Part shown: piece after piece, positions 1 to 62,553 of the stretch
How the letters are laid out: each line of letters opens with the position of its first letter
Numbering within the stretch: the first letter of the stretch is position 1
Origin: Macrostomum hystrix
Taxonomy: Eukaryota > Animalia > Platyhelminthes
Direction of reading: 5' to 3'
Assembly (NCBI GenBank): GCA_950097015.1
Contig: CATNEN010000034.1
Span: 4,030,001 to 4,094,000 of the forward strand
DNA length: 64,000 nt
Notes under the pieces: generated by a model
The model's input: only the letters and a program-made list of their open reading frames with translations
Databases searched by the model: none
What the model was told of the DNA's origin: nothing
Position numbers and translations under genes: made by a program

Positions 1-1947
1 TTCTTCTCGACCTCCTGCGCCTCGATATAGTCGCTGCTCTCCTTGTGCTGCTTCTTCATCATCTGCAGCTCCTTGCTGAGCTGGTCCTTCTCCTTCTCCA
101 CTTTCTGGCGCTCCATGTTCTCCTTCACGAGCTGGCCGTCCTTCATGGCCGTCTCCTCCTTCAGCTGGTCGATCTGGTGCGACATGATCTTGTGCTTCCG
201 CTTGAGTTCGGTGATCTCGTCCTGGGCCTCGATCAGGTTCTTGCTGTACAGGTTGCGGTCGCTTCGAACGGCCTCGTACAGGTTCTGCTGCTGCCGCAGG
301 CGGGTCTCCGTTTCGGCGATCTTCTTTTTATAGTCGAAGATTTGCATCTCGCGCACCTTGACATCCTCCATGTGTTGCAGCACCTTCTGGGTCAGGTCCG
401 AGGCCTCGTTTATGTAACGGTCGCGCTCCTTCTCGAGCTGGTAGATGATCTTGCGCTGCTTCTGCGCCTCATCCTTGTAGTTCTCAATCTCCTGCTCAAG
501 AGTCTTCTTCGACGCCTCGTGCAGCTTCACCATGCCGCGCTGCTTCTCGGTAGCGTTGGCCGCCTTGATGAGGTTCTTGTTGAGAATGTCGCGCTCCCGG
601 GTCAGCTCGTCCACAACCTTCTTGTCGTTCTCGCTGGCCTTCTTGATGAGGTCCATTTCTGAATTTGGGGCGGTGAATCGAAGGTGAGCATAGCGAATTG
701 GACTCAGGACTATGTTTTCTTGACTTTTCCCGGGGAAGTAAATAGTCACTTAAGTCTGTTGATGAAAAAGTAGCTCACCCTTCTCCATGCCGTGAATCTC
801 ATTCTTGAGCTGCTCTCGCTGGCCCTCCAGGGTGCTCTTGTTGTCCTCGGTTAGGCGCAGCTTGCGCAGGGTGGTCTCCCGGACGCGCACCAGCTTCTGG
901 ATCTCGCTCTTCAACGTGTTCACCTCGTCCTCGCGTTGCTGAAAAATGTTTCATTTTTGAATAAATTAATGTATGAAAATTTGTTAAACTGTATCATTGA
1001 TTTCCGCTTGTAATTACCTTGAGCTCGAGCGTCTTGGACTGATTATCTCCCATGAGCTGCTGCACTCGCTGGCGCTGATCGTTGAGCACCAGGGTGTCAT
1101 CCTTGATCTTGGTCTCCAGAAAGTGCTGCTGCCGCTGTGCCTTCTCGAGCTCCGATTTGGTCATTCGGATCTCATCCTCGCGTGTCTTGTTCTCCTGCGA
1201 CACCCCGGCAAGGCGCGAGCGCAGCGTCTGGATCTCTCCCTCCTTGGCCTCGGCCTCGGCCTTGGCCTGCTTCAAGTCGCGCTCCATTTTCTCCTTCTTC
1301 CGCTGCTCCCTGGTGGCCTCACTGTTTTTGGTTTGAATCTCCTGCTCAAGTTCGGCCACCTTGGTCTGGCAGTCGGTCAGGTCCGTCTCCAGGCGCAGCT
1401 TCTGCGACTTGTTCTCCTCGAGCTCGTCTCTCAGGTGGCTGTTCTGTTGCATCAGCTCATCCCGCTGCTTAGTGAGCTCCTCCTTGGCTTCAAGCAGCTC
1501 GCTGACGTTCTGGTCCTGGCCGGAGGTCAAGCCGGCGCCCTGCTCGACCAGCTTGCTGAGGTTGGCGATCTCCAGCTTCAGGCTCTGGATGGTGTCGCGC
1601 GCTCGGGCCTCTTTGTCGTGCGCCGCGTCGACCATCTTCCAGGCCTTCTCGATCTCCTTCTTAAGCGAGGCAATGGTGGCTTGATCCTCCTCCGAGAGTT
1701 TCAACGCTGACGTCATTTTAGCCGAGTTCGCCACGATCTCGGCTTTGAGCTCGCGACATTTCTGCATCAGGCGCTTCTCGCTCTCGTGACTCTTCTGCAA
1801 GGCTCGCATGAGCTTCTCGTATTCGAGCTTGAACTTGTCCAGGCCCTTGTTGCCCTGAAGCTCTTGCAGTACCTCCTGGAAGTCTTTCTCCAGCGTGTCA
1901 AACGCTGAGTCGTCCATATTGCCTTTTTCCTTCCGTTCCTCCTTCTC
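1..1947 (-). CDS. CFAP58: Cilia- and flagella-associated protein 58 (CCDC147), 5' part; gene continues beyond position 1
   Basis: Exons 1947-1018, 938-779 and 658-<1 have GT-AG junctions in consistent phase. Translation (DSAFDTLEKDFQEVL..EIEKAWKMVDAAHDKE..NYKDEAQKQRKIIYQLEKERDRYINEASDLTQKV..QQQNLYEAVRSDRNLYSKNL) closely matches CFAP58 as I recall it. First Met is at 1917; an in-phase acceptor lies at 1948. Confidence 0.93.
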
Positions 1948-4863
1948 CTGTTGGGTTGGGTTGGTGATCGGACTTTAAAGATATTTCAATCTAATAATTA
2001 CCTTCCTTCGAATATAGATATAAAAGGTTAAAAACAATTAAACAATAAACAAAAAATCTCCAAATTTAAACACAATTTATAGACATGGAGTCGAAATCTG
2101 TTTCTGGTATATATATGTACATTTGCTGTTTGCCCGTTACCATTGGAATGTCAATTTTTAAACCTAATTTAAACGAATTAGCAAAAACAAAAACTTGCAT
2201 TTTCTATTATAGAATATAAGTTACGAAAGTAATACATTTATATGAATTGAAATAAATTTCCTGCAACAAAGCCTTCTGTAATATTATTTTGGGTGACGAA
2301 TATTTTCATAATCGAACAGTTTTCAAGTACATTTTATTTAAAAATATAACTATATTGAACACAAAAGTGACAAAATATTAAATATTGAAAACTTTTGTTT
2401 TCGACATCTTTTGTCGATGCATTTACGATTCAGAAAACTGTACGAGTATATCCGACGTACAAATGACTTCTACACACTCTATAATTTATTATTGAGCTCA
2501 GATATTTTAAACAAGATATTAGAAGGTTGAGCTGTTTTCACACGTTGAATCTAATAAAGTAGAAAATGTGCAGCTGTTAAGCACAGATATTGAATATCAA
2601 CTCAACGTTTTACACATTAATAATGAACTTCACCTAGCAATAATTTGAACTAGACCAAGAAAAATAAATTCTTGACCAGGACAGTAATAATTAATTTGGC
2701 AGTAAGTACCCATTCAATTGTTGTATCGACTCAACGTTCACTCAATTTTATAATACAACTTAAGCTTAACAGTTCTTCAGAAGACACAGGCATTCTATGC
2801 TACGGATGTTTATGATAGACCAGAGTCAATGGAAAGATATTTTAAAAACTTACATCTGCCATGCCTTCACTGATTTTGCTCTTGATTTAAGTAAAGTCGG
2901 TGTTAAGATTTTACTTATATCTCACTACTGGTTTGTACACGTAGAATTATTAAGAAAGCCCATCTTTAAATAAAGTGCTCTAAAATGTGTATCTATTGGT
3001 TTCTATTAACTATTTTATAAAGGTAATAATATTATCTTTTGTCAAAACAATTAAAAGATTTAAATGCAATTTAAAGATGAATTTTTATTTTAAACCATTA
3101 TAAATTGTTACTGTTGAAGGTGCTTTGTTTTAACTTGTGTCTAAAGCCGTAGATCATAGATAGCAGCGAATTTGCGAAACTCTAAAGATAAGAGCATTTG
3201 AGCTTGTGTTACTTTTTATACCGCACGGAATGAAGTATAAATTCAAGTCTTTAAAAATCAAAGTCAGATATTTTTTCGGCACAAACTTCTAATGTCTAAC
3301 ACTGAATAACGTACTTCAGTACTTGCTTTTCGGGGAACAAGATTTCCAGAACAACGACTGAAGGTTCATGAGTATTGTAATGTACGAGTTAGTATGAATC
3401 AATCTCAAAATACAATAGTGCATACTATTATGCGGGCAAATAGATAAGCACCACAATAATGCTTGAGTTCTTAATTTTATATCTACTATAAATATATAAT
3501 ATGCGACAAACAAAGACTAAAAGGAAGTAGTACGTTACCTAGTAGTATCTAGCATCCATCGATGAAGTATCTACCCCTGTACACACTAACCGAAATAATC
3601 TGTCAATAAGCCTCGCGCTTTGGCATGCTGGGCTAGCTATATGATCTAGGCTTGTGATCATAGAGTTGCCTAGAAGAAGACACTCGCAGTAAAACTGTTG
3701 TTGAAGATTTCGCGCGAGCTGTGACAGAGCAAAACAGCACAGACTATTTGGGATTGCGGAATCATGAGCCATAATTAGCGGACACACAGTGGTAAATTCT
3801 CAAAATCGCTGCTTAAATTGCAGAGTCTCAAATAACTGCTGCCTTCTTAGGAGCTTTGTGTTTTCTTTAGTCAAGGAGCTAGAGCTGCCCCTCGCCTTTT
3901 ATCAGGAACTGTCTGTATTCTCAAGTTGAAGGATACGACACTTAAAAATAGGTCAATTTTAAAGGCATTAATTTGTTTAAAAAATACGCTAAGGAGATTG
4001 GAAAATGTCCTTGATCGCAACTTTAAATTTTCTCGATATAATTAAGTTGCAAGTGAGTTTCCAAGTGCCAGCCGAAAACTGCCAGTCGACAACTGACAAC
4101 CGACAACTGCCAGCCGACAAATGCCAGCTGACTGAATTTTCCATATTATCCCCAGCACTTCCGACATGGGATTTTTATTCCCAATCTAGGGTTATACGAG
4201 TTAGGATTCTAAATTTGGACATAAACCCAGACTTCAGGTACTCCAAGAGCTCAATCGCAAGCTGACGTACGTAGATCTCTTCAAACCAAGTAGGAGCTAT
4301 GAGTTTGCACGCAATAGAAATCTGATACGCCTTCAGTACTGGATATTTTCAACCAGCAGTCGGTTTTAACGACCATTTTCAACATGGAGACAGGGCAACC
4401 ATTTGACAGGCAGTCAATAAGATCTGGGCCAGGATTACCAGGTGATTCACTGGCTAAAAAATAAGAACTAGCCAGGTAATACTGCAAAATCTAGAGTATC
4501 ATGTGGAAAAGCCATCAGCAGAGTGCATGTGCCCCACCCATCGCTACTGCTTTGTCGCCTCTCTTGTCCACCCACTGCAGTCTCTAAGCCGTGCTTGGCC
4601 AATCGCGGCTGTCTGTTCCATATATGCAGCAGTTGGGAGAGTTGATGTCGTGTGGTTAGGGAGGGCGTTGCACTGATGATAAGGGGTGGGTGGTAATTCG
4701 GGCGTGGTCTCTATATGGGAGTTGCTGACCAACCCACGCAAATTCAAATAGGCAATTCGTGCCTCTCATTTGTCCTCCAGCGTGAGATTTAACTTGTACA
4801 TGTAACACCAAGAGGCACTCGTTTGCCTCAGATCTCGGCACCAGCATCGACTGGGGAGGCAAA

Positions 4864-7800
4864 ATGACTTCACAACTGGAGCGACATTCTGTCAGCAGTA
4901 GCAGCGGAGGCGGTGGAAGTGTTTCAGAGTAAGTCCACTATATGATTAATTCAACTTCACTCGTAATTATCCGAATGCAAGTGAACATGAGTCCTTTTGA
5001 AGCAAGGATGTTCAGAACTAGATAGAGGGAACTGAAGTCTCTGACAGTCTCTGACAGTCTCTGACAGTCTCTGACAGTCTCTGACAGTCTCTGACAGTCT
5101 CTGACAGTCTCTGACAGTCTCTGACAGTCTCTGACAGTCTCTGACAGTCTCTGACAGTCTCTAACAGTCTCTGACAGTCTCTGAAGTCTCTGACAGTCTC
5201 TGAAAATTCCTAGATAGAGAGAGCTGACAATTACAAAGGCTGTACCATACAAAACCGCAGCTGCGACAGCTGGGAGGAGGTCCGCCTCATGCGCGGCAGT
5301 CGATTCGAGTGCCTTACGGCAGGCATGGTGCTGATCGACCTGGCGCTGATCACTCACCAGCTGGCTGTTGACTTGGCGACAGCAGCCAACAGTCGAAACC
5401 CAACCGGTTCAACCAACAAGACCTGTAAGCCTAGTTTTTTTTAACAATAGCATGAAATGAAAGTTGGTAGATCGTGTTTATTTTGCTGTGCTATTCTCTC
5501 GCAGCCACAACCGCCGATGTCCCAAAGTGGCAGCTGAGCTCAAACAAATTCTACACAGCCGTGCTCATCTTTGGAGTCTTGTTTGTCATTGAGGTATATA
5601 CGCTTAACTGTTCTATAAATTCTATAGACCTCATCTCAATGACAAATGCGACTTAAACTAAACTTCTAGAGTGCTTTGAGAAACGGCAAAAACTTGCTGG
5701 ATCGGAGGCGCTTCGTAGCTTTGAATGTAAGCCTAGAAAAACCTGGTTGAGTGTTCTTCGGCTGAGCCGATTAAACACCCACCTCACTCCACCACGCACT
5801 ACACTCTACCACCCACCTCACCCCACAACGCACTTCACTCTACCACCCACCTCACTCCACAACGCACTTCACTCTACCACACACCTCACTCCACAACGCA
5901 CTTCACTCTACCACCCACCTCAATCCACCACCCACCTCACTCCACATGTACCTCACTCCACCACGCAACTAACTTCTCCACCCACCTCACTCCAGCACCC
6001 ACCTTACTCCAACACCCACCTCACTTCTCCACCCACCTCACACCACCACCCACCACATTTCCCCCCCACACTCCACCACCTACCTCACTTCTCCACCCAC
6101 CTCACTCTCCACCAACCTTCTCGATATTAATAAACCCACTACAATTGCGAGAAGAACAACAGAAGCGCCTGTCGTCAACCCATCGAGGTTCTTGACGGCT
6201 GCGTTTGCATTGGCAGCTGCGCGCTAAATTTTGGTCTTCACTTTAGCGGCGCTAGCAGGCTGCTGCGCGACCTACTGGCACTGCTGATTGCGGCTCGTCT
6301 GGGCAGGACACTGCAGCTGTTCCGGGGTAAGTCGGCTAGCAGAGCGGCTATCAGACAGACAGCGATTCAATAACCAACATTGAAATGCGTTGCAGGTCTG
6401 AGCTACGCGGAGAAACAGTGGCTACTGCAACTGCTCAGCAGTCATCGACAGATTGAGGCCGCCAGCGCCGAGAGGCTGAGGATGCTGCAAACTGAGCTGG
6501 GCAATCGCGACCTTGAGTGCCAGGACCTCAGGGCGCTGATTAAAGCGGCGACACTTTCCAGGCATCGGCTGAGAATGAGTGAGTCTGACAGGGTTCTGTA
6601 CGGAGTGTGGGACAGGGTTCTGTACGGAGTGTGGGACAGGGTTCTGTACGGAGTGTGGGACAGGGTTCTGTAGGGAGCGTGGGACAGGGTTCTATACGGA
6701 GTGTGGGACAGGGTTCTGTAGGGAGTGTGGGACAGGGTTCTGTACGGAGTGTGGGACAGGGTTCTGTAGGGGGTGTGGGACAGGGTTCTGTAGGGAGTGT
6801 GGGACAGGGTTCTGTAGGGAGTGTGGGACAGGGTTCTGTAGGGGGTGTGGGACAGGGTTCTGTAGGGAGTGTGGGACAGGGTTCTGTATAGAGTGTGGGA
6901 CAGTGTTCTGTATAGAGTGTGGGACAGGGTTCTGTAGGGAGTGCGGGACAGGGTTCTGTAGGAAGTGTGGTGTAGGAAGTGTGGTGTAGGGAGTGTGGGA
7001 CACGATTCTGTTGCTAAAAAGCATGAATATTTTCTCTTTTGACCTTTTTTGTCTCTTGTTAGTGGGTCTGCGAGCAGACATACATGTAATTCAGTAATCT
7101 TCTGTGGACACACGTGGGTACAAACACGTTTAGAAGAGATAAAAAATATATTTCAGAATTTTCCGCAAATGTTTTTGCTCACAGACGTTTGTCCTAAAAT
7201 ACCTTTTTTATCACTAAACTGTACAAAAAGTGTACAATACTTTCAGTAAGTCGCAGGCAAGCAGCTACCCTGTATAAGTGCATTCTCTCTAGCACTGCAC
7301 GGCTGTTAATAATTCAGCCACGGACACTTAAATTAAGAGAACGGGAAAGATCCGGAATTTGGATGAGGCGGGGTGGAGACTGGCGGTGGAAAAACTAAGT
7401 GCTCGAGGTTTAATCACTGGGCCGGGTTGGCAACGCCATTTAATAGCTGTTGGATTTCTTTTACTCGTTTGTGAACAGATTGACACATGACTTTTGGCGG
7501 ATAGAATGAACGCATTAGACATTTCAGCATGGGAAATCAATTGTAAATTATTAATGGGAAGTGGATAATGGATATGGAATTTAATAATGGATTTAGGAGG
7601 GGATTATAGAAATGGTTTTGAATAGTGGATGATAAATATGGGAGGGGATGATGGATATGGGAGGGGATGATGAATATGGGAGGGGATGATGGATATGGGA
7701 GGGGATGATGGATATGGGAGGGGATGATGGATATGGGAGGGGATGATGGATATGGGAGGGGATGATGGATATGGGAGGGGATGATGGATATGGGAGGGGA

Positions 7801-8398
7801 TGATGGATATGGGAGGGGATGATGGATATGGGAGGGGATGATGGATATGGGAGGGGATGATGGATATGGGAGGGGATGATGGATATGGGGGGGATGATGG
7901 ATATGGGAGGGGATGATGGATATGGGAGGGGATAAGAGATATAGGAAGGGGTTAGTGGGTTTGGGAGGAATGTTGGTGAAGATGGGAAATTAGAGCACAC
8001 GGGGTTATTTATTAAATTGGTATTAGAAGCTGATTATCTGGAGCAGCATGGCTAGTCACAGACAGGGCATAGGCACTGTACTCGTACAGCAATATGGTAG
8101 CAAGAGTGAAAATCTCCAAGACAGCATCGAAATTGCAGAGCACCAGCTGCAGATGGAGAAGGCTTTGCCAGAGAATGCCTTGCTCCCGCCGCAGCCGCCG
8201 ACTCCGCTGAGACTGGCTCAGCTGCAGCAGCAGCAGCATCGGTCTCATCAATACGACTCCGGACATAGCTCGGACTCGGCGCCAGAGAGTCCGCAGGAGG
8301 CGGAGCCAGTCAGCATCGAAGCGACGCCAGAAGAGGAGACTCAGCCAGCGCTTGAGTTTGGTATAGGTCAGCCAGTTAAACAATTATTTATACTTTAA
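4864..8398 (+). CDS. Divergent voltage-sensor-domain-only protein (Hv1/HVCN1 or TMEM266-like) with C-terminal coiled coil
   Basis: Proposed exons 4864-4928, 5222-5424, 5505-5593, 5670-5726, about 6152/6155-6326, 6396-6578, 7063-7085 and 8027-8398. S1 FECLTAGMVLIDLALIT, S2 FYTAVLIFGVLFVIE, S3 PIEVLDGCVCIGS, S4 LLALLIAARLGRTLQLFRG, then a heptad-rich tail. No pore domain. The acceptor of the S3-S4 exon is weak and uncertain. Confidence 0.7.
5037..5203. repeat. 10-bp tandem repeat (CTCTGACAGT)n, intronic
   Basis: About 16 near-perfect copies directly visible. Confidence 0.95.
5775..6115. repeat. C/A-rich low-complexity degenerate repeat, intronic
   Basis: Recurrent CACCCACCTCACTC-like motifs. 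Confidence 0.8.
6585..6990. repeat. 24-bp minisatellite (GACAGGGTTCTGTAcGGAGTGTGG)n starting just after a splice donor
   Basis: About 16 copies; explains the 8-aa periodic ORFs in the track. Confidence 0.95.
7625..7935. repeat. 19-bp minisatellite (GGGGATGATGGATATGGGA)n, intronic
   Basis: About 16 copies directly visible. Confidence 0.95.
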
Positions 8399-8439
8399 CT
8401 GAATGATGCGGATCAAGAGAAGGGCGGTTGCGACTGGGG

Positions 8440-10025
8440 GAGGGATGAGACAGGGGGGAGATGAGACACGGGGAGAGATGAGACACGGGGAGAGATGAGA
8501 CACGGGTAGAGATGAGACACGGGGAGAGATAAGACACGGGGAGAGATGAGACAGGGGAGAGATGAGACACGGGTAGAGATGAGACACGGGGAGAGATAAG
8601 ACACGGGGAGAGATAAGACACGGGGAGAGATGAGACACGGGTAGAGATGAGACACGGGGAGAGATGAGACACGGGTAGAGATGAGACACGGGGAGAGATA
8701 AGACACGGGGAGAGATGAGACAGGGGAGAGATGAGACACGGGTAGAGATGAGACACGGGGAGAGATAAGACACGGGGAGAGATGAGACAGGGGAGAGATG
8801 AGACACGGGTAGAGATGAGACACGGGGAGAGATAAGACACGGGTAGAGATGAGACACGGGGAGAGATAAGACACGGGGAGAGATGAGACACGGGGAGAGA
8901 TGAGACACGGGGAGAGATAAGACATGGGGAGAGATGAGACACGGGTAGAGATGAGACACGGAGAGAGATAAGACATAGGGAGAGATGAGACACGGGGAGA
9001 GATGAGACACGGGTAGAGATGAGACACGGGGAGAGATAAGACACGGGGAGAGATGAGACAGGGGAGAGATGAGACACGGGTAGAGATGAGACACGGGGAG
9101 AGATGAGACACGGGTAGAGATGAGACACGGGGAGAGATAAGACATGGGGAGAGATAAGACATGGGGAGAGACGAGACACGGGTAGAGATGAGACACGGGG
9201 AGAGATAAGACACGGGGAGAGATGAGACACGGGTAGAGATGAGACACGGGGAGAGATGAGACACGGGTAGAGATGAGACACGGGGAGAGATAAGACATGG
9301 GGAGAGACGAGACACGGGTAGAGATGAGACACGGGGAGAGATGAGACACGGGTAGAGATGAGACACGGGGAGAGATAAGACACGGGGAGAGATGAGACAG
9401 GGGAGAGATGAGACACGGGTAGAGATGAGACACGGGGAGAGATAAGACACGGGTAGAGATGAGACACGGGGAGAGATAAGACACGGGGAGAGATGAGACA
9501 CGGGTAGAGATGAGACACGGGGAGAGATAAGACACGGGGAGAGATGAGACACGGGTAGAGATGAGACACGGGGAGAGATAAGACATGGGGAGAGATAAGA
9601 CATGGGGAGAGACGAGACACGGGTAGAGATGAGACACGGGGAGAGATAAGACACGGGGAGAGATGAGACACGGGTAGAGATGAGACACGGGGAGAGATGA
9701 GACACGGGTAGAGATGAGACACGGGGAGAGATAAGACATGGGGAGAGACGAGACACGGGTAGAGATGAGACACGGGGAGAGATGAGACACGGGTAGAGAT
9801 GAGACACGGGGAGAGATGAGACACGGGTAGAGATGAGACACGGGGAGAGATAAGACACGGGGAGATGAGACACGGGGAGAGATGAGACACGGGGAGAGAT
9901 GAGACACAGGGAGAGATGAAACACGGGAGAGATGGGGCACAGGGAGAGATGAGACAGGGAGAGATGAGACACAGGGAGAGATGAGACACGGGAGAGATGG
10001 GGCACAGGGAGAGATGAGACAGGGA
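8440..10025. repeat. 17-bp minisatellite (ATGAGACACGGGgAGAG)n
   Basis: About 90 copies with variants; produces the 518-560 aa spurious minus-strand ORFs. Confidence 0.95.
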
Positions 10026-11199
10026 GAGAAGAGATTATTTTGCGGTCGAGAGTTTTAGGCGTGAAAAATACTCCCACTTGCGAAAACTCTTGCAAATACT
10101 ATTATTAATTGGATGCAGTTTTTTACTTTCCCGATTTCACCCACCCCATTTAAAAGGCACTGTGCTCGCCACTGGATAATGAGAATCGCCTGTCAATGTT
10201 CCTATTTCAGAAGAGGCAGAACCAAAACAGCAGACAGAATCGCTTCATGATGTTTGATTTAGTGAATTCGACGTAGACTTACCTTTGTCTGACAATCAAA
10301 ATTTATTTTCCCATGATTTAAACTGGCCTCTTCAAGCTGCTTGCATGAAGGAATGCTTACAATCAGCGTTTTTTGCTCACTGACTGCTAAGTAAAAAGCC
10401 TTAGCAGATTATTTTTCCGAAAATTTCGCAATTTCATCCTTACTAAATATGACGTCAGACTCTATTTTTAGCCACACACATGCAGTCGCGGCGAAACTAC
10501 TAGTAGTATTATATATATTACCGATAAATACAACTGAAGTCGCATCAAAGTGATTTGGATTGATCTTATAACACTATTACAGGATCAAAATAACTATCAA
10601 AATAACGAATAAGGCTATACGATTGGAATGAATGAGGTCAAGAAAGCAATGAAGTGATTGCGGGCATGCTGAGAAGTAGGGAAAGTAGTCAGAGAATTAG
10701 GGTGGTGTTTCAGAGAAATATGGTGTTGCCATGGAGAAGTAGTGTCCCCAGTTCACGGACTGAACAACAGCAGTACACCGTCTTCGGAAGCGGTTCAGAA
10801 CAGTATTCAAAGGTACTATTGGAATTTAGCTTTACAATAACTACTGTATTGTAGAGTCAGTTGGGATAATGGTATTAAATAGAGAAGAAGTAAAAAAGAA
10901 CATGCACGGGATACTCTGCGGATCGAATGGCTGAGAAATTAAGAGCTTGCGGTCAAAGAGATTGCACAATGATATGTACTATTGCAACGGGAGAAAGAAA
11001 CCCGTACGCATGGATAGCCCATATTGCGCGTGCACTTTTATCTGCTGCACTGAGCTGAGCTAATCTATTAGGAAGAAGACTAGAGCAATAATATTATTGT
11101 TGCCGCATTGCAAAAGAGCTCAGATAAAATAGTCTTCTTTGGATCAAAGGAGTTCGGTGCGAGGACAGTAATGGATAGCTGGTAGGTCTGCGGAATAAG

Positions 11200-11880
11200 T
11201 AGGGTGGGTGAGCAATCAAGAAGTAGGGTAGGTACGCAATGGAGAAGTAGGGTAGGTAGGCAATGGAGAAGTAGGGTAGGTACGCAATAGAGAAGTAGGG
11301 TAGGTAGGCAATGGAGAAGTAGGGTAGGTAGGCAATGGAGAAGTAGGGTAGGTAGGCAATGGAGAAGTAGGGTAGGTACGCAATGGAGAAGTAGGGTAGG
11401 TAGGCAATGGAGAAGTAGGGTAGGTAGGCAATGGAGAAGTAGGGTGGGTAGGCAATGGAGAAGTAGGGTGGGTAGGCAATGGAGAAGTAGGGTGGGTAGG
11501 CAACGAAGAAGTAGGGTGGGTAGGCAATGAAGAAGTAGGGTGGGTAGGCAATGGAGTAGGGGGGTAGGCAATGGAGAAGTAGGGTGGGTAGGCAATGGAG
11601 AAGCAGGGCTGGTAGGCAATGGAGAAGCAGGGCTGGTAGGCAATGAAGAAGCAGGGCTGGTAGGCAATGGAGAAGTAGGGCTGGTAGGCAATGGAGAAGC
11701 AGGGCTGGTAGGCAATGAAGAAGCAGGGCTGGTAGGCAATGGAGAAGCAGGGCTGGTAGGCAATGAAGAAGCAGGGCTGGTAGGCAATGAAGAAGCAGGG
11801 CTGGTAGGCAATGGAGAAGCAGGGCTGGTAGGCAATGGAGAAGTAGGGTGGGTAGTTGTTGGAGAAGTAGGGTGGGTAGG
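11200..11880. repeat. 24-bp minisatellite (AATGGAGAAGTAGGGTAGGTAGGC)n with a second variant block
   Basis: About 28 copies; variants change along the array. Confidence 0.95.
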
Positions 11881-12427
11881 CAGTGAAATGGAAAGGGGTA
11901 GGCGCCCTTGCTGCTATGGTGAACTAGTAAAGAACCAAATAGCTTGTGAACCATGCATATCGCATTGGAATTATGCCTATTTGATAGAATAAAAAGTACA
12001 AGCTTAAATCTACCTTTATAGCTGTAGAAGAACAATGTGCTATTGACCAAAGTGCAGTGACATCTCATACGGGCCACAGTAGATTAACTGCAAACGCACA
12101 ATTAAGCCCTGACTACAATCCATGACAACAATCGACCAGCCATTTCTTGGCTTTGTAGCTCAATTACCGACACAAACCGCGACATTGTTAATCGATCGGG
12201 CATCGACTAAGGATCTGTTACACAAGTTGCACGGTTTCACATGAATGTACTACAAAAATTGACTAATCGAATAGCGAGGAAGAATTAGCGGTGATTGAAT
12301 CCAGTCGGCTCAGTTCACATGATTTCTTGGTTAATTATTTCATAGAGGAATTACTTAGTAAGTAAAATTGAGAAAATAATAAAAGGTAAATGTTAGGCAT
12401 AGGGGGTACCGGTGCAAAAACAGTGAG

Positions 12428-12752
12428 AGTCAGTGGAGTAGCCAAGGGCAGGCAGTGGAGTAGCCAAGGGCAGGCAGTGGAGTAGACAAGGGCAAGCAGT
12501 GCAGTAGCCGAGGACAGGCAGTGGAGTAGACAAGGGCAGGCAGTGGAGTAGACAAGGGCAGGCAGTGGAGTAGACAAGGGCAGGCAGTGGAGTAGACAAG
12601 GGCAGGTAGTGCAGTAGACAAGGGCAGGCAGTGGAGTAGACAAGGGCAGGCAGTGGAGTAGACAAGGGCAGGCAGTGGAGTAGACAAGGGCAGGCAGTGG
12701 AGTAGCCAAGGGCAGGCAGTGCAGTAGACAAGGGCAGGCATTGGAGTAGCCA
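12428..12752. repeat. 22-bp minisatellite (GCAGTGGAGTAGACAAGGGCAG)n
   Basis: About 14 copies. Confidence 0.95.
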
Positions 12753-14299
12753 ATATGAAATGTGAATCGCATTCCAAGAATGCAGATAAAAAACCGACAC
12801 AAAAAATGACGAATTGAAGACAGTAAAAGCCTGGACTTAACCACAAAATGAAATTTTAAAGATTTTAAAAATTGTTGCATCAGGTTGCTGCGGTGCTCTG
12901 AGAAACAGCTTCTGTTAAAGCGCAGTAACAGTTAGATAAAGACTTTGATTAATATTATTAATAATATATATATATTAAACATTATAAGGGGCCAGACCAC
13001 ACAAAAGCAGGTAGTGCCGCAAGTTGGGTCATAAATAACACAAACACACAAACAATATCGATATTTTACGTACAGATAACATCATCGATATAGGGAGCGT
13101 CTGTCCTATAGGAGTTTAATCCATAGACAACGACAAAAACACAGTGCAGCGCCCCTCCCGGTACAAATAATGGAGTTTTATTATTTCACCTGTATAGTCA
13201 CTGCATGCTACTAATAGTAGTGAGAAACAGAGAAGCGTGACCAACGGTGATTAGGATGTGAAAAAACGTTCACTTTTTAAACAGAAGTAAATAAACAGCA
13301 GATGAATATAAAAAATGAAAACGTCAAAAACAGTTTTAAAGCTTTCTTTCCAGAGAGAGAGATTACTGCAAATTTATAAGGCTTAGTTAGAGGCATATCT
13401 AGGGGTTCGAATATTTTTAAGCAAATCAAAATCATTTCTTTCTTATCTAAATGATGGCCAACCTATTCAGAAACTATTGAGAATAATACATGCTCTACAC
13501 AGAACAAAACTATTGCTGCTTATGAACAACACAAACTAACACTAGACCAATGCAAATATTTCTCTTTCATTTTTACTTCTATTTTCATACTGCAACTAAA
13601 AAATCCTGTAATACAAGTACACTAATAAGAGTGATTGCACGATATAAACAGTTAAACAAGAGACAGCTAATTTTTAGATTTTACCGTAACTGGTACAGCT
13701 GTCAATTGTGATTCCAATGTAACAATAAGAAATCGCTGTTTGTTGCAAGAATACAGTTAAAAATATTAACCAAGAGATTTAGCAATTGATGGTCCCAATT
13801 GTTAGTTTTTTATCTAATGTGAAAACAATTTTGTGAAAGACGCAAATTATGCAAACAAAAGACTTATTAAATTACAGAATACGAGCGTATCTGACAAAAC
13901 AGCTTTATTTCATTACAGTGAACAGTCAAAGCGTAGGCGAAATGTTATATTAGAAAATCAATTTGGACATCTTGGGTGTGACCGCTGTACATAAGCGGTC
14001 GTAAATCAGATGTGAATTGTTTCCATGGCGACGACAAATCAATTACCCGATAAAAATAATTAGGGATGCGGGTCACATTCAAATTAATTTGTTTCCTAGG
14101 TATTGAAATTGCCACTACTTTTGAGTTTGAAAATAACTTAAGCCTGGAATGCTTGATAAGCAAAACTAAGGAACAAACAAGCCAGCCGATATGTGTTGAA
14201 AAATGTCAGAGAAAGTGATTTAATCCCACACTACGCAATCAATTAATGTGAGAAGCAAAATAAAAAAAATAAAGAAAACAAAAAAGAAAAGAAATTCAG

Positions 14300-17200
14300 C
14301 TAGCCATCCTCTTTCGGCGGCGTGAACCAGCCCTTCTTCTCGTGAATATGAACAAGCGCCCTGAAGCTGTGCTGAGCTCTGGCCAGAGTGTAGGAATTCT
14401 TGTTGGCAGCAAAATTTATCCGGGCTTTGCCCTTCACCAGAGTAGCCGAGATCTGCAGCACCAGGGACTCCAGGCTGTAGGCCGACGACCAGCCCTGTGC
14501 GCCAATTTCAATTCTTTGTTTTAATTCAGCCTACTTAAATCGGTTAGAGTTATGCTTGGGTGAACATCAGCTGATCTAGGGTGAACATCAGCTGATCTAG
14601 GGTGAACATCAGCTGATCTAGGGTGAACATCAGCTGATCTAGAGTGAACATCAGCTGATCTAGAGTAAACATCAGCTGATCTAGGGTGAACATCAGCTGA
14701 TCTAGGGTGAACATCAGCTGATCTAGGGTGAACATCAGCTGATCTAGGGTGAACATCAGCTGATCTAAAGTAAACATCAGCTGATCTAGAGTAAACATCA
14801 GCTGATCTAGAGTGAACATCAGCTGATCTAGGGTGAACATCAGAGCCTGATCTAGAGTAAACATCGGCTGATCTAGAGTAAACATCAGAGCCTGATCTAG
14901 AGTAAACATCGGCTGATCTAGAGTAAACATCAGAGCCTGATCTAGAGTAAACATCGGCTGATCTAGAGTAAACATCGGCTGATCTAGAGTAAACATCAGA
15001 GCCTGATCTAGAGTAAACATCGGCTGATCTAGAGTAAACATCAGCTGATCTAGAGTAAACATCAGCTGATCTAGAGTAAACATCAGCTGATCTAGAGTAA
15101 ACATCAGCTGATCTAGGGTGAACATCAGCTGATCTAGAGTAAACATCAGCTGATCTAGAGTAAACATCAGCTGATCTAGAGTAAACATCAGCTGATCTAG
15201 AGTAAACATCAGCTGATCTAGAGTAAACATCAGCTGATCTAGGGTGAACATCAGCTGATCTAGAGTAAACATCAGCTGATCTAGAGTAAACACCAGCTGA
15301 TCTAGAGTAAACATCAGCTGATCTAGAGTGAACATCAGCTGATCTAGGGTAAGCAGACAAGGGCAGATTAGCTTAGATTAGATTAGGGGTTGACATTAGC
15401 TGATAAACATAGCTAACAAACATTGAAAACTTTTAGTTAGTTTAACATATCGCATAATTAGAATTTCTAGTAGCAAGTTGAGCCAACAAGGTCGAGTGAG
15501 GCAACATGGACGGTCCAACAAATCTAAGCAGACACAAATAATACTCAAAGCCAACCTGTTTAGTGAGCAGTTCCATGCAGATGGCGCCTCCCTGGAGCAC
15601 ATAGCCATTGTTAAGGACCGGATGGATGACGCGAACAAATGGCGGCTCAAAAGGAAATGCGTCTTTGAAATGAAAGCCGAGAGTGATGCGAGCAGTGTCT
15701 GAATCACCGCTGCTGCGGCTCAGCTGTTCTAGGTCGCGCTGCAACGGACTATCCGGATCAACACGCAGCAGATGCACGTGCCACTCGTACAGGCTGTCAT
15801 TAACCAACTCCACGGAGAATATTCCCGCCTTCAGGTTTGATGACCTAAATTAGAGGAAAAAAATATTGTTTACATCCCTGCGTCACTACTGATTTTGTAA
15901 ATGAGTAGTATGACAGTAGACACGCGTGATCTTTTTGCGAAGTTATCTAAATTTAGATTTCTAATGTGCCATTTTTAACGATATTAATTAAAAAACTCAC
16001 CTGTAGATCTCTTTGAGCTCCTTCATCAGCCTATCCGTAGCCTGAACAGAGCCAACAGGTGGAGCGGCCTGATTAGCATAGGCCTCCCTCTGTGCTGTCT
16101 TCAGCCGGCGCAGAGTCTCAATGTGAGCGCGTGATTCAATGCCGGAAAATTCCGACGACATTTCGGCGGCTTCGCCGGAGCTGGCCGCGGCCGATGAAGC
16201 CGCGACTGAAGACGAATGACAGCCGGCTAGTTCGGAATTCGCGCCTGGGGCAGCGTCAGACATGTGCAGATCGTCTTCGTAGTCTTCGAAGCCGGTGTCT
16301 TCCTCGTCCGACATACTGCTGCCGGCGGCGCCGTCATCATCCTGAGGATAATTCCCAATGCCCATCATTATGCACATCATCATTCCCAATTCCCAATGCC
16401 CATCATTATCGTAATTTTGCTATATCTTCATCAAGGTGGTCGGTGGCATAGCGGTTATCGCGTTTGCCTCTCGCACCGCGGTCCCTAAGTTCGATTCCAC
16501 GGGGAGGCCACATTTATTTGGGGCGCAGCCGCGGAGAGAAGGCTTGGGGGCTTGTCGTGCAATTTACGCCCTTGAGGGCCAACCTCCAAGGCATAGTGAA
16601 ATATACACTGCCTGACGATGAGAAAGTCAGGGCAGATGTACACACCTGTGTGAGTGTGTGCCTGCGTAAAGTATCTGTGTGCGTGTCTGCTCAGGAGTCA
16701 GCGAAATGGGCAGAATTGCCTCCTCGCTGGCTGCGTGTCTAGTGTCACCAAATGATGTGCCATTGCCCGCAGCCCTCCTGCAATTATTATTATGGATGCA
16801 TTAAGCATTATTTGGCGACTGTCAACCTGTAGACAGCATGGATTCGCCAGAGAGTTCTACACAGAGCAATGTTAATTGTCCTTGTCCCCAGGGTCTTCGA
16901 CAAGAATCGCTGTATATCTCGACGATGCTGACTCGGACGGCTTTGAAAGTTAGTTCATCGCAAAATCGGTCATTCGGTCTGGGAGCTATCGTGAAGTAGG
17001 CAGTGGCCAGTGGGTATTTAAAATACTCCCCATGTTATTTCCCCATGTGGAAATAGCGTAGTGGTGATTTGGCCAAATTAATGCGGCCTCGCTGCGGATT
17101 TGAGCTCACGAAACTTGTTGCGAGAGTCTCAGATGCATTAACCGCTACTCAACTCACTGCCCCATGCTCAAACCCACACTATTTTCAACCCATCATCGAA

Positions 17201-35641: not shown

Positions 35642-36075
35642 TCATGCTTCAAGATTTCAGTTTCCAAGTAGGATCGACTCAAAGTTGTGGTCAATGGTTT
35701 TACTCGAATTTGAAATGCAGCATTGGGTCATACTTGACGCTTCATAACCCAAAGAAAATTTCATTTTTTTACCCTATAAAATTTACATTACCACGAAAAA
35801 CAGTATTATTTGATGCAGTGTAATGGAAAAGCCTGTCCTCCAATCAAGGTAGTCTGAAGGTGAACTCAGTTCGGGATTGGCTCAGTTAAGGCGAGCTCAT
35901 TAAGGATACGTAAATACCTGTCTCTATTGGTGCCTATACCTCTTGGCTTCAGGTAGAAAAGTAAGCCAACATAGCAGATCGGTACGTCACAGCCTGAGAG
36001 CCCCGCACGGTACAGCTACCATCTCTTACTGAGCTCAAAATAATTGGGCCCTGATACGGTGTGCATTCTACTAAA

Positions 36076-37170
36076 ATGAGGCTGCTAATTTCTGGCTGGG
36101 TCTTGGCAGCAACGCTGCTACTGGTTGTCTTGGCCCATAGCAACGCTGCCGCCGAATTCGAGACGTACGATGATGCGAACGAAGAGACGGCCATTGAAGA
36201 CAAAGGATTCGACCGAATTGGAAGTGGACACGGCAAGGGAAGGCCTAAAAGACAGTTGCACAACGGTGGAATGTTTGGCAAGCGACAGTACAACGGTGGC
36301 ATGTTTGGCAAGCGACAGTACAACGGTGGCATGTTTGGGAAGCGACAGTACAACGGTGGCATGTTTGGCAAGCGACAGTACAACGGTGGAATGTTCGGGA
36401 AGCGACAGTACAACGGAGGAATGTTCGGGAAGCGACAGTACAACGGTGGAATGTTTGGCAAGCGACAGTACAACGGTGGACTGTTCGGGAAGCGACAGTA
36501 CAACGGTGGAATGTTTGGCAAGCGACAGTACAACGGTGGAATGTTCGGGAAGCGACAGTACAACGGTGGAATGTTTGGCAAGCGACAGTACAACGGTGGA
36601 ATGTTTGGTAAGCGACAGTACAACGGAGGAATGTTCGGGAAGCGACAGTACAACGGTGGAATGTTCGGGAAGCGACAGTACAACGGAGGAATGTTCGGGA
36701 AGCGACAGTACAACGGTGGAATGTTCGGGAAGCGACAGTACAACGGAGGAATGTTCGGGAAGCGACAGTACAACGGAGGAATGTTCGGGAAGCGACAGTA
36801 CAACGGAGGAATGTTCGGGAAGCGACAGTACAACGGAGGAATGTTTGGCAAGCGACAGTACAACGGAGGAATGTTTGGCAAGCGACAGTACAACGGTGGC
36901 ATGTTTGGCAAGCGACAGTACAACGGAGGAATGTTCGGGAAGCGACAGTACAACGGAGGAATGTTCGGGAAGCGACAGTACAACGGAGGAATGTTTGGCA
37001 AGCGACAGTACAACGGTGGCATGTTTGGCAAGCGACAGTACAACGGAGGAATGTTCGGGAAGCGACAGTACAACGGAGGAATGTTCGGGAAGCGACAGTA
37101 CAACGGAGGAATGTTTGGCAAGCGACAGTACAACGGTGGAATGTTCGGCAAGCGAGAGGACGACAAATAA
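36076..37170 (+). CDS. Prepro-neuropeptide: 28x QYNGGMFamide, 1x QYNGGLFamide, 1x QLHNGGMFamide
   Basis: Signal peptide MRLLISGWVLAATLLLVVLAHSNA, acidic spacer, then 30 units each ending in GKR (amidation Gly plus dibasic site), and an acidic EDDK* tail. Unit variation is almost all at synonymous positions. Confidence 0.95.
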   Translation: MRLLISGWVLAATLLLVVLAHSNAAAEFETYDDANEETAIEDKGFDRIGSGHGKGRPKRQLHNGGMFGKRQYNGGMFGKRQYNGGMFGKRQYNGGMFGKRQYNGGMFGKRQYNGGMFGKRQYNGGMFGKRQYNGGLFGKRQYNGGMFGKRQYNGGMFGKRQYNGGMFGKRQYNGGMFGKRQYNGGMFGKRQYNGGMFGKRQYNGGMFGKRQYNGGMFGKRQYNGGMFGKRQYNGGMFGKRQYNGGMFGKRQYNGGMFGKRQYNGGMFGKRQYNGGMFGKRQYNGGMFGKRQYNGGMFGKRQYNGGMFGKRQYNGGMFGKRQYNGGMFGKRQYNGGMFGKRQYNGGMFGKRQYNGGMFGKREDDK

Positions 37171-54928: not shown

Positions 54929-55677
54929 ATAGCTCTTTAAGTTGATAATTAAATTAGTATTAAAGCCTATTTTCTATTTGTATTTATTGCTCTGCTTTTA
55001 GCTCGGCAGAATTGTTATTCATACTATAGACCAAATCTGGTTTACAAATGCTTACAGATGATAAAATTTCTTATGCAAGTATGCCAGTGTTTCGAAAAAT
55101 AAAAGGTTTTATATTGGCAGAGCACCATGGTTACTAATGCATTAGTTGGCGACAGTCCACTTGCATGTGTGAGCATACACACACATAAATTTGTACAACT
55201 ACCCTGCATTTCAAATGCTCTGGCAGTGTGCAGTTAATGTGCCTTGTTCATTAGACTTCATGTGCATGCATTTAATGAAAACCCCTTTCATTCAGGTGCT
55301 GTGCATAAAATCTATTTGCCTATATGCCAGGTAGACTCAGAGTTCAATCTTACTTATTTTTCTGAGAATTATTTGGACTCAGTTCGTATTGATAATATCA
55401 ATGTTTTGTAGAACGAAAACGATTATCTGCCAAGAGCTGAATTTTGTACTGAAAAACTGAAATTGCTGCATAAAAATTTAGTTGCATACTAAAGTAGCAT
55501 TACTTGTACTGTATTATGTATCAGACTTAAAATTCTGCCAGACACTCCCTCTCATAGGCTATCGTACTGGTGGATAATGGGCTATCAAAAATTGTAACTT
55601 TTTTCGTCCTTTGTCTTTTTTATTTCAGCTCTAAAAGCGGACGTAAAGCCTTAGAGCTCTCAGCCACCTGTAGCACA

Positions 55678-59436: not shown

Positions 59437-59788
59437 ATATCTGCGTGTCTTATAAAAGTTTTTTTACGAATCTTCACCGCTCTGCTTTTAGCAACATATT
59501 TTTTCAAATATTTTTTCTGCTGTTATATTCAGACTAATGACCAAATTCGTTTTTTGCTTATCAGATTTTACGAGGTGGCTAACTAGTAATTATTGAAGGA
59601 TTTTATCGTTTTACTGCATGCAACAATTAATCAATATGATATTGTATTGGCCGGACAATTGGTTACTGACGCAAAAGTTGACGTCTGTCGACACGCATAA
59701 GCACACACATTCTGCGTTTTATAATCTTATTGGAAGCTGTACAGTCTTGTATTTTTTGTGCCGATAGCCGCCATTGACTAATGCTGTA

Positions 59789-62405: not shown

Positions 62406-62553
62406 CTCAGAATTTATAGACCAGTGACTCTCATAGATTGTCGCGGGATCTTAAAACATTCAATGTTGAATTTTACAATATTTTTCATTATTTCAGCTCT
62501 GAGACGTGTCTCAGCCCACGCTAAGTCTCAGAGTCTCGGCCACCTGTACCACA

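What the first reader, a model, noticed from the sequence alone, without database searches (positions are those of the whole stretch)
4864..6578. Voltage-sensor-only protein with a rewired Hv1 S4
The track misses this gene because it is split into small exons. It keeps the Hv1 S1 selectivity-filter Asp (LIDL, codon 5337-5339), the S2 F-x-x-E and the S3 E-x-x-D. However, S4 reads R-L-G-R-T-L-Q-L-F-R where human Hv1 reads R-L-W-R-V-A-R-I-I-N. The signature Trp becomes Gly, the third Arg becomes Gln, and an Arg occupies the N214 position. It has a coiled-coil tail and no pore or phosphatase domain. It could be an Hv/TMEM266 subfamily with shifted gating or different selectivity, or a non-conducting voltage sensor.
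Basis: partly seen in the sequence, partly recalled or inferred. Interest (0 to 1): 0.75.

Follow-up and report, generated by a model that had tools for sequence, protein, structure and literature searches.

The report
Flatworm Hv1-like voltage sensor, altered S4

Summary
The finding is real, but its coordinates and one motif need correcting.

A full-length M. lignano paralogue, PAA67992.1, is 41% identical (E 2e-51). UniProt names it automatically "Voltage-gated hydrogen channel 1". It has the same intron phases and identical 57, 139 and 183 nt exons. This places the S3-S4 exon acceptor at 6188, not 6152.

A profile of the family gives only two significant hits among solved structures, human Hv1 (E 7e-5) and mouse Hv1 (E 1e-4). 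That alignment confirms:
- S1 Asp = D112
- R162 = R1, G164 = Trp207, R165 = R2, Q168 = R3, R171 = N214

The paralogues also lack Trp and R3.

The protein fails the Hv signature RxWRxxR but keeps the selectivity Asp that TMEM266 and VSP lack. Single Hv1 mutants at each changed position still conduct, so a proton channel with altered gating is slightly favoured over a silent sensor.

No RNA evidence was obtainable, and the whole spliced protein could not be folded. This is a new variant of a known kind, of moderate interest.

The parts
4864..4928 (+). Exon 1: start codon and a Ser/Gly-rich N-terminus (residues 1-22). It leaves 2 nt before the intron.
   Evidence: ATG followed by a GTAAGT donor. 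The phase matches exon 1 of the paralogue P0006, which also begins M-T. No transcript evidence.
5261..5424 (+). Exon 2: cytoplasmic lead-in (VRLMRGSRFEC), helix S1 with Asp48 (5337-5339, = Hv1 D112) and Asp59 (= D123), and the start of the outer S1-S2 loop with an N-K-T sequon.
   Evidence: 42% identical to S1 of P0006. The profile alignment to 5OQK and 3WKV places this Asp on D112. Codon coordinates.
5505..5593 (+). Exon 3: the rest of the outer loop and helix S2, ending in F103-V-I-E106 (= Hv1 F150 and E153). The exon ends in phase 0 directly after the Glu.
   Evidence: Strong pyrimidine tract plus CAG acceptor. The paralogue's exon also ends directly after its F-L-L-E.
5670..5726 (+). Exon 4: 57 nt, 19 aa (S-A-L-R-N...R-F-V-A-L-N), the inner end of S2 and the basic S2-S3 loop. 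Arg110 sits at the Hv1 K157 position.
   Evidence: The paralogue has a 57 nt exon in the same phase with R-N, R-F and the final N conserved. Including it gives a Glu-to-Asp spacing of 22, against 21 in the human Hv1 chain as printed and 22 in TMEM266. Older M. lignano models skip this exon.
6152..6187 (+). Probably intron, possibly an alternative acceptor.
   Evidence: AG|A at 6151|6152 keeps the frame, but the conserved 139 nt exon length and the N-termini of P0001, P0003 and P0004 point to 6188. I put this at about 70:30 for 6188.
6188..6326 (+). Exon 5: 139 nt, helices S3 and S4.
- S3: N125-V-L-D128 (= D174) and N139 at the Hv1 D185 position.
- S4: R162 (R1), G164 (Trp207 position), R165 (R2), Q168 (R3 position), R171 (N214 position).
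   Evidence: 78% identical to P0001. Profile alignment to human Hv1. Exon length identical to P0006 exon 5.
6396..6578 (+). Exon 6: 183 nt, G172 and the coiled-coil helix (residues about 172-233) with the conserved Cys213.
   Evidence: The E5-E6 and E6-E7 joins are present in the annotated paralogue proteins. The exon is 183 nt in P0006 as well. The equivalent helix in the AlphaFold model of P0006 has pLDDT 83-93. Heptad register.
8139..8398 (+). Exon 7: acidic, Pro/Gln-rich disordered tail (residues 233-318) with the conserved D-S-G-H-S-S-D-S-A-P-E-S-P motif (from 8255), and a TAA stop at 8396-8398 if no further splice follows.
   Evidence: tblastn of P0001 finds 8261-8344. The start K-H-Q-L-Q-M-E-K matches K-Q-Q-L-Q-M-E-K of P0003. 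A possible donor at 8360|8361 and a further exon could not be found.
5032..5203 (.). 10 bp x 17 minisatellite inside intron 1.
5776..6118 (.). 17 bp x 20 minisatellite inside intron 4.
6587..7011 (.). 24 bp x 17.5 minisatellite at the start of intron 6. A 19 bp x 16 array lies at 7627-7933 in the same intron.

Best explanation
This is an intact seven-exon gene (4864-8398, + strand) of a Macrostomum flatworm. It encodes a divergent member of the Hv1 (HVCN1) voltage-gated proton channel family. The protein has a cytoplasmic N-terminus, one S1-S4 voltage-sensing domain with no pore or enzyme domain, a C-terminal coiled coil that probably makes it a dimer, and a disordered acidic tail.

Shown here:
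- Gene structure, supported by comparison with paralogues.
- Homology to Hv1.
- Residue correspondences.

Inferred mechanism:
- Depolarisation moves S4 outward past the Phe103 gasket, with Glu106 and Asp128 as inner counter-charges.
- Arg162 and Arg165 are the main gating charges, followed by an uncharged rung (Gln168) and an extra Arg171 one turn further in.
- The mid-S1 Asp48 and Arg165, the pair that makes Hv1 proton-selective, are kept in both paralogue groups. I therefore favour a protein that still lets protons through its voltage sensor.
- I expect gating unlike classical Hv1: faster without the S4 Trp, less or differently distributed gating charge, and outward current possibly limited by Arg171.
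For: Gene model:
- Six GT-AG introns keep one frame.
- blastp of the 318 aa product against the M. lignano protein P0006 gives 41% identity over 224 aa, E 1.9e-51.
- P0006's gene has the same intron phases and identical 57, 139 and 183 nt exons.
- The P0001, P0003 and P0004 proteins contain the E5-E6-E7 joins.

Selection:
- Two genomic copies of P0006 differ at 3 of 1029 coding sites, all at third codon positions, whereas their introns differ by 1-12%.

Family:
- The profile A4 gives only two significant hits in the PDB, human Hv1 5OQK (E 7.4e-5) and mouse Hv1 3WKV (E 1.3e-4).
- Atlas feature neighbours are Hv1-family clusters at 0.91, 0.87 and 0.86 for S1-S4, and 0.90 for S3 to the coiled coil.
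- UniProt's automatic name for P0006 is 'Voltage-gated hydrogen channel 1'.

Topology:
- There are four hydrophobic segments. The S2-S3 loop is basic (5 K/R) and the S1-S2 loop carries a glycosylation sequon.
- AlphaFold gives four helices plus a long C-terminal helix for the paralogue.

Conduction is plausible:
- Asp at the D112 position is kept in both paralogue groups, whereas TMEM266 has Val there and Ci-VSP has no acidic residue (PMC6392501, PMC10377628).
- Hv1 mutants W207A/S/F, R211Q/A/S/H/C and, in mammalian cells, N214R all still conduct protons (PMC4969798).
Against: - No transcript evidence for this copy: no RNA run could be listed.
- Junctions E1-E2, E2-E3 and E3-E4 rest on splice signals, frame and protein homology only.
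- Pfam, NCBIfam and single-sequence PDB searches of the exons and of P0006 find no Ion_trans or Hv1 match.
- The only E-value support is about 1e-4, from a five-row profile whose S2 columns were not modelled.
- The AlphaFold model of the paralogue is low-confidence (pLDDT 58.7), and Foldseek found nothing significant.
- The S4 Trp is described as totally conserved in eukaryotic Hv channels, and RxWRxxR is the family signature (PMC10377628). Both are missing here.
- N214R gave no current in oocytes (PMC4969798).
- Several acidic residues of Hv1 (E119, E171, D185) are Gln, Asn and Asn here.
- The combination of changes has never been tested.
Confidence: 0.45

Rival explanations
1. Same gene and same Hv1 ancestry, but the protein no longer conducts. 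It would be a dimeric voltage sensor whose S4 movement is passed through the coiled coil and the conserved tail to partners or to its own turnover, working like vertebrate TMEM266/HVRP1.
For: - The two hallmarks used to recognise working Hv channels, the S4 Trp and the RxWRxxR motif, are lost in both paralogue groups (PMC10377628).
- Arg at the N214 position abolished current in oocytes (PMC4969798).
- Three acidic residues of the Hv1 vestibules are neutral here.
- As in TMEM266, the coiled coil is followed by a disordered tail, here with a motif conserved across paralogues (PMC6392501).
- A TMEM266 cluster appears among the Atlas neighbours at 0.79.
Against: - The mid-S1 Asp is conserved in both paralogue groups, although they are only 41% identical overall. 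TMEM266 (Val) and Ci-VSP lack it (PMC6392501, PMC10377628).
- Every single substitution seen here is compatible with proton current in at least one expression system.
- The nearest neighbours by profile and by features are Hv1, not TMEM266.
Confidence: 0.35
2. This copy is a silent or decaying duplicate (unexpressed paralogue or young pseudogene) in a duplicate-rich Macrostomum genome. The open frame would then reflect recent duplication rather than function.
For: - No RNA run could be listed.
- The public protein collection holds no protein identical to this copy's exons.
- The introns are full of minisatellites.
- The 3' end differs from the paralogues, and no counterpart of their last exon was found.
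Against: - All seven exons are open with intact GT-AG sites.
- The copy differs from its nearest annotated paralogue at 15-24% of residues without any stop or frameshift.
- The differences spare the charged core residues.
Confidence: 0.12
3. An unrelated four-helix membrane protein whose resemblance to Hv1 motifs is chance.
For: - Pfam and single-sequence PDB searches are blank.
- The structure-based Atlas neighbours of the low-confidence Atlas model are unrelated helical proteins.
Against: - The profile search hits only Hv1 chains at E about 1e-4, with S1, S3 and S4 aligned in order.
- Two independent parts of the family have Hv1-family clusters as feature neighbours.
- The Glu-to-Asp spacing of 22 and the R1-to-Gly spacing of 10 match Hv1.
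Confidence: 0.03

Closest known systems
Hv1 / HVCN1 voltage-gated proton channels (human 5OQK, mouse chimera 3WKV)
   Same: - S1-S4 domain only, with a C-terminal coiled coil.
- Asp in mid-S1 (D112).
- Phe and Glu in S2 (F150, E153), a basic residue at K157, and Asp in S3 (D174).
- R1, R2 and the Gly after S4.
- These are the only significant solved-structure relatives.
   Different: - Trp207 is Gly here (Ser or Val in the paralogues).
- R3 is Gln (Gln or Thr in the paralogues).
- N214 is Arg (Arg or Gly in the paralogues).
- E119, E171 and D185 are Gln, Asn and Asn.
- The zinc-site His140 is not kept.
- There is an extra disordered tail of about 85 aa.
- No Pfam VGPC1_C or Ion_trans match.
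M. lignano PAA67992.1 / A0A267H2I5 (P0006) and A0A1I8F2W9, A0A1I8GJV4, A0A1I8GL29 (P0001, P0003, P0004)
   Same: - Same architecture and same exon plan.
- P0001, P0003 and P0004 belong to the same paralogue group as the window gene. They are 76% (S3-S4 exon) to 82% (coiled-coil exon) identical, with S4 reading R-L-S-R-T-V-Q-L-C-R.
- P0006 is a second group, 41% identical.
   Different: - P0006 has only two S4 arginines (R-L-V-R-L-L-T-L-F-G).
- The group-A database entries lack S1, S2 and the start of S3.
- None has been studied. Their names are automatic and inconsistent: 'DMAP1 domain', 'Ski_Sno domain', 'Ion_trans domain', 'Voltage-gated hydrogen channel 1'.
TMEM266 / HVRP1
   Same: - Hv1-related voltage sensor without pore.
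- Coiled-coil dimer with a conserved coiled-coil Cys.
- Disordered C-terminal extension.
- No proton current in TMEM266, a possible functional parallel (PMC6392501).
   Different: - TMEM266 keeps R-x-x-R-x-x-R.
- It has Val at the D112 position.
- It has a tail of about 250 aa.
- Here the Asp is kept and R3 is lost.
- The Atlas similarity is only 0.79.
Atypical Hv-like sequences listed in 'Voltage-Gated Proton Channels in the Tree of Life' (PMC10377628)
   Same: - Limacina antarctica has a 'tryptophan-free' sequence with the S1 Asp.
- Saccoglossus has a second gene lacking Trp.
- A Schistosoma sequence printed in the supplement reads R-L-W-R-V-I-F, so it also lacks R3 (machine-read text).
- The authors single these out as untested departures from the motif.
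   Different: - None combines loss of Trp, loss of R3 and an Arg at N214.
- The Saccoglossus gene also lacks the S1 acid.
- The Macrostomum entry in that list is a different transcript, given by accession only.
Mollusc Hv3 channels and the Hv3-like Macrostomum gene noted earlier in this scan (s1-368592)
   Same: They show that Hv channels with an incomplete S4 motif (x-P-W-R-x-x-R) still conduct protons (PMC10377628), and that this flatworm has several Hv-type genes.
   Different: Those keep Trp, R2 and R3 and lose R1. This gene keeps R1 and R2 and loses Trp and R3.

Membership tests
Hv (HVCN1) voltage-gated proton channels | Detectable sequence homology to Hv1 across the S1-S4 domain | tested here: met
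   The profile A4 (P0006 plus the window's exons and P0004) against all PDB sequences gives 5OQK at E 7.4e-5 and 3WKV at E 1.3e-4, with nothing else below 0.27. Single sequences and Pfam find nothing.
Hv (HVCN1) voltage-gated proton channels | Four membrane helices with no S5-S6 pore and no enzyme domain | tested here: met
   Hydropathy of the spliced product. Four helices plus a long C-terminal helix in the model of the paralogue. No other Pfam domain.
Hv (HVCN1) voltage-gated proton channels | Acidic selectivity-filter residue (Asp or Glu) in mid-S1 | tested here: met
   Asp48 (5337-5339) aligns with D112 of 5OQK. It is also Asp in P0006.
Hv (HVCN1) voltage-gated proton channels | S4 signature R-x-W-R-x-x-R/K, with the Trp described as totally conserved (PMC10377628) | tested here: not met
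   The window reads R-L-G-R-T-L-Q. The paralogues read R-L-S-R-T-V-Q and R-L-V-R-L-L-T.
Hv (HVCN1) voltage-gated proton channels | Charge-transfer centre: Phe and Glu in S2, Asp in S3 | tested here: met
   F103, E106 and D128, with a Glu-to-Asp spacing of 22. S2 was placed by spacing and by the paralogue, not by the PDB profile, which treated S2 as an insertion.
Hv (HVCN1) voltage-gated proton channels | C-terminal coiled coil that dimerises the channel | tested here: inconclusive
   The best heptad register has 8 of 18 a/d positions as L/I/V/M, and Cys213 falls at an 'a' position. The helix has pLDDT 83-93 in the paralogue model. There is no match to Pfam VGPC1_C, and dimerisation was not tested.
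Hv (HVCN1) voltage-gated proton channels | Voltage- and pH-gradient-gated, proton-selective current | not testable with these tools
   Needs electrophysiology.
TMEM266 / HVRP1 | Non-polar residue at the D112 position and an intact R-x-x-R-x-x-R (PMC6392501) | tested here: not met
   Asp48 is present, and the third position is Gln168.
TMEM266 / HVRP1 | Coiled coil followed by a long disordered C-terminus | tested here: inconclusive
   A low-complexity acidic tail of about 85 aa follows the coiled coil, against about 250 aa in TMEM266. No sequence similarity between the tails could be tested.
Voltage-sensing phosphatases (VSP) | PTEN-like phosphatase domain after S4 | tested here: not met
   No phosphatase domain in exons 6-7 or in the paralogues.

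The most novel reading that the evidence does not exclude
Macrostomum carries a lineage-specific offshoot of the proton-channel family, with at least two paralogue groups and several copies each. This offshoot has given up the two S4 features thought indispensable for Hv channels (the Trp and R3), and in one group has moved a charge to the N214 position. It would work as a new kind of stand-alone voltage sensor. It would either be a proton pathway with a 'gapped' charge ladder and fast, weakly voltage-dependent gating, or a non-conducting sensor. In the second case the coiled coil and the conserved D-S-G-x-x-S tail motif would couple membrane potential to phosphorylation-dependent signalling or turnover.
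Probability: 0.3. Interest if true: 0.65.

Novelty: new variant of a known kind. Interest (0 to 1): 0.45.

Why it matters
Hv channels are recognised, and their mechanism argued about, largely through three features: the S1 Asp, the S4 Trp and the three S4 arginines. Natural proteins that keep the Asp and the charge-transfer centre but drop the Trp and R3 are ready-made experiments. They bear on what the Trp does for slow gating and pH sensing, on whether R3 is needed for selectivity, and on what an Arg at N214 does to the open pore. The authors of the 2023 family survey (PMC10377628) call for tests of such 'tryptophan-free' sequences.

Macrostomum lignano is a transgenic and RNAi-tractable model, so the physiological role could be tested in the animal. 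If the protein does not conduct, it would be an invertebrate counterpart to the still unexplained TMEM266.

In practical terms, the public M. lignano entries for this paralogue group are N-terminally truncated and misnamed. The model given here repairs them.

Tried and rejected
1. Pfam scans of each exon, of the paralogue fragments and of P0006: no Ion_trans or VGPC1_C, only weak coiled-coil noise. NCBIfam was likewise blank.
2. Single-sequence PDB searches with the S1 exon, the S3-S4 exon, P0006 and profile A1 (S3 to tail): blank or noise. Only profile A4, which includes S1, reached Hv1.
3. Word search with the S3-S4 reading frame: nothing, because of the length window.
4. Whole-library search with the 58 aa S3-S4 piece: only the M. 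lignano fragment P0001 and a repeat protein. No relative outside Macrostomum is therefore visible at this query length.
5. RNA evidence: no run could be listed for 4600-7400, so read laying was never used.
6. Exact look-ups of P0001, P0003 and P0004 on contigs: not on record. The DNA of the nearest paralogue could not be compared, so no dN/dS was computed for this copy.
7. AlphaFold of P0006 residues 28-250 with a five-row alignment gave pLDDT 58.7. Foldseek against the PDB then found nothing below E 3. Voltage-sensor-containing TPC1 and SLC9C1 are among the insignificant rows. I draw no conclusion from that.
8. The whole spliced protein of the window has no reference, so I did not fold it or search with it in the shared tools. 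It was analysed only inside scripts.
9. MAFFT misplaces the short S2 and exon-4 pieces, so they were left out of A4.
11. A last exon like the paralogues' (ending K-E-I-N) was sought in 8300-16000 and not found.
Full report
**What is in the sequence.**
The region is eukaryotic, rich in minisatellites. Earlier notes of this scan and all best protein hits place it in the flatworm genus Macrostomum. On the + strand, open segments with canonical borders can be joined in one frame:
- E1 4864-4928
- E2 5261-5424
- E3 5505-5593
- E4 5670-5726
- E5 6152 or 6188 to 6326
- E6 6396-6578

So are F-V-I-E at the end of E3 and R-L-G-R-T-L-Q-L-F-R-G at the end of E5.

**Finding relatives.**
- Pfam and PDB searches with single exons were blank.
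- A length-restricted word search was also blank.
- No RNA run could be listed.
- The whole-library search with the 58 aa S3-S4 piece found one real relative, P0001. This is an N-terminally truncated M. lignano UniProt entry, 78% identical.
- Two sister entries, P0003 and P0004, followed.

These proteins run straight from the S4 exon into the coiled-coil exon and then into further sequence. tblastn of P0001 located that sequence in the window at 8261-8344. The phase-1 acceptor at 8138|8139 gives K-H-Q-L-Q-M-E-K, matching K-Q-Q-L-Q-M-E-K of P0003. This exon encodes an acidic, Pro/Gln-rich tail.

A profile word search with these sequences then found P0006 (342 aa; PAA67992.1 and two identical entries; UniProt automatic name 'Voltage-gated hydrogen channel 1'). 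It also found the shorter models P0005 and P0007.

**Gene model, corrected.**
P0006 is encoded at three loci of the M. lignano assembly GCA_002269645.1. Mapping it onto the DNA gives the exon lengths below.

| Exon | P0006 (nt) | Window (nt) |
|---|---|---|
| 1 | 80 | 65 |
| 2 | 122 | 164 |
| 3 | 143 | 89 |
| 4 | 57 | 57 |
| 5 | 139 | 139 |
| 6 | 183 | 183 |
| 7 | 186 | 260 |
| 8 | 119 | not found |

- The window's intron phases are the same as those of P0006.
- Exon 5 is 139 nt in the window only if the acceptor is 6187|6188.
- P0001, P0003 and P0004 all begin exactly at the residue equivalent to 6188 (A-F-D against our V-L-D).
- I therefore take 6188 as the main acceptor, at about 70:30. The in-frame 6152 site would add 12 loop residues.
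- With 6188 the distance from the S2 Glu to the S3 Asp is 22 residues. It is also 22 in P0006 and TMEM266 (PMC6392501), and 21 in the human Hv1 chain as printed.
- The position of intron 2 within the variable outer loop does not line up with P0006, although its phase is the same.

The resulting 318 aa product is 41% identical to P0006 over 224 residues (E 1.9e-51), covering S1 through the coiled coil. Two P0006 loci differ at 3 of 1029 coding positions, all third codon positions, while their introns differ by 1-12% with indels. That family member, at least, is under purifying selection.

**Is it an Hv1 relative?**
- A profile of P0006 residues 28-250, P0004 and the window's S1, S3-S4 and coiled-coil exons (A4) was searched against all PDB sequences.
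- It hits human Hv1 (5OQK, E 7.4e-5) and the mouse Hv1 chimera (3WKV, E 1.3e-4). The next hits are coiled-coil noise at E 0.27 and above, and no other voltage-sensor protein appears.
- Independently, language-model neighbours of P0006 residues 28-185 are three Hv1-family clusters (0.91, 0.87, 0.86; 25 of 30 hits carry Ion_trans).
- Neighbours of P0004 residues 1-107 include an Hv1-family cluster (0.90) and a TMEM266 cluster (0.79).
- AlphaFold of the paralogue with only five alignment rows gave the expected helices (four plus a long C-terminal one) but low confidence (pLDDT 58.7). Foldseek found nothing significant.
- The whole spliced window protein has no reference, so I did not submit it to the shared tools.

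**Residue correspondences (alignment, numbering).**

| Window residue | Human Hv1 position |
|---|---|
| Asp48 | D112 |
| Asp59 | D123 |
| Gln at +7 from Asp48 | E119 |
| Phe103, Glu106 | F150, E153 |
| Arg110 | K157 |
| Asn125 | E171 |
| Asp128 | D174 |
| Asn139 | D185 |
| Arg162 | R205 |
| Gly164 | W207 |
| Arg165 | R208 |
| Gln168 | R211 |
| Arg171 | N214 |
| Gly172 | G215 |

- The closest paralogue reads R-L-S-R-T-V-Q-L-C-R and P0006 reads R-L-V-R-L-L-T-L-F-G. Loss of Trp and R3 is therefore a family trait. The Arg at N214 belongs to the window's group only.
- The topology fits a protein with both ends inside the cell. The S2-S3 loop has 5 basic residues, the S1-S2 loop carries an N-K-T sequon, and S4 runs into a helix with a heptad pattern.
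- That helix contains Cys213 at a core position, conserved in all paralogues. It lies 41 residues after the Gly. By my recollection of the human numbering (G215, C249) the spacing there is 34, one heptad less. That figure is from memory, not from a tool.

**How it probably works.**
The voltage-sensor core is kept: the gasket Phe, the inner Glu and Asp, and R1 and R2. A voltage-driven S4 movement is therefore the natural reading.

Whether protons pass is the open point.
- In favour:
  - The S1 Asp is retained in both groups, while the non-conducting relatives TMEM266 (Val) and Ci-VSP lack an acid there (PMC6392501, PMC10377628).
  - Hv1 mutants at each changed site still conduct. W207A/S/F open about 100 times faster and remain proton-selective. 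R211Q, A, S, H and C conduct. N214R conducts weakly in mammalian cells (PMC4969798).
- Against:
  - The Trp is called totally conserved and RxWRxxR is the recognition motif for Hv channels (PMC10377628).
  - N214R gave no current in oocytes.
  - Three vestibule acids are neutralised.
  - The combination of changes is untested.

I put a proton channel with altered gating at 0.45, a TMEM266-like silent sensor at 0.35, a silent or decaying copy at 0.12, and an unrelated protein at 0.03.

**Novelty.**
- A 2012 survey counted three M. lignano transcripts with HVCN1 homology, without detail (PMC3447372).
- The 2023 family review lists one Macrostomum accession and notes two Hv genes in some flatworms. 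It flags 'tryptophan-free' sequences in Limacina and Saccoglossus as untested curiosities.
- A Schistosoma sequence printed in its supplement lacks R3.
- I found no paper on this Trp-less, R3-less group. Its nearest database entries are truncated and misnamed.

It is a new variant of a known kind. It is useful as a natural mutant of the Hv1 S4, but it is not a new class.

Noticed in passing
window 8255-8293 (tail of exon 7); same motif in P0001, P0003, P0004 and P0006: D-S-G-H-S-S-D-S-(A/S)-P-(E/D)-S-P is the only stretch of the disordered tail conserved across both paralogue groups. Its first six residues have the D-S-G-x-x-S form of a beta-TrCP phosphodegron. That reading is mine from general knowledge and is not tested.
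   Followed up: partly
window 36061-37170 (+): An open frame with a signal-peptide-like start and about 30 tandem copies of K-R-Q-Y-N-G-G-M-F-G, which looks like a multi-copy amidated neuropeptide precursor.
   Followed up: no
P0005 and P0007 versus P0006; L001 8316-8372: Older M. lignano protein models skip the 57 nt exon that encodes the inner end of S2 and the S2-S3 loop. This leaves only 2 residues between the S2 Glu and the S3 Asp. It is either a mis-prediction or a non-functional in-frame isoform.
   Followed up: partly
window 5032-5203, 5776-6118, 6587-7011, 7627-7933, 8437-10034: Every long intron of the gene, and the DNA just downstream, holds a different minisatellite (units of 10, 17, 24, 19 and 17 bp; the last has about 95 copies). 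Intron 2 of the P0006 gene is 1293, 888 and 486 nt long in its three copies.
   Followed up: no
window 55570-56673 (+) and 62506-63051 (+): Two copies of the same open frame share a long near-identical N-terminal stretch beginning M-A-T-Y-N-S-K-N-K-S-V-D-G-C. They lie 7 kb apart and are separated by a 24-unit repeat array and a mariner-like transposase frame at 59778-60599 (-).
   Followed up: no
window 994-1917 (-): A 307 aa open frame for a Glu/Lys-rich coiled-coil protein lies upstream of the gene, on the opposite strand. It was not identified.
   Followed up: no
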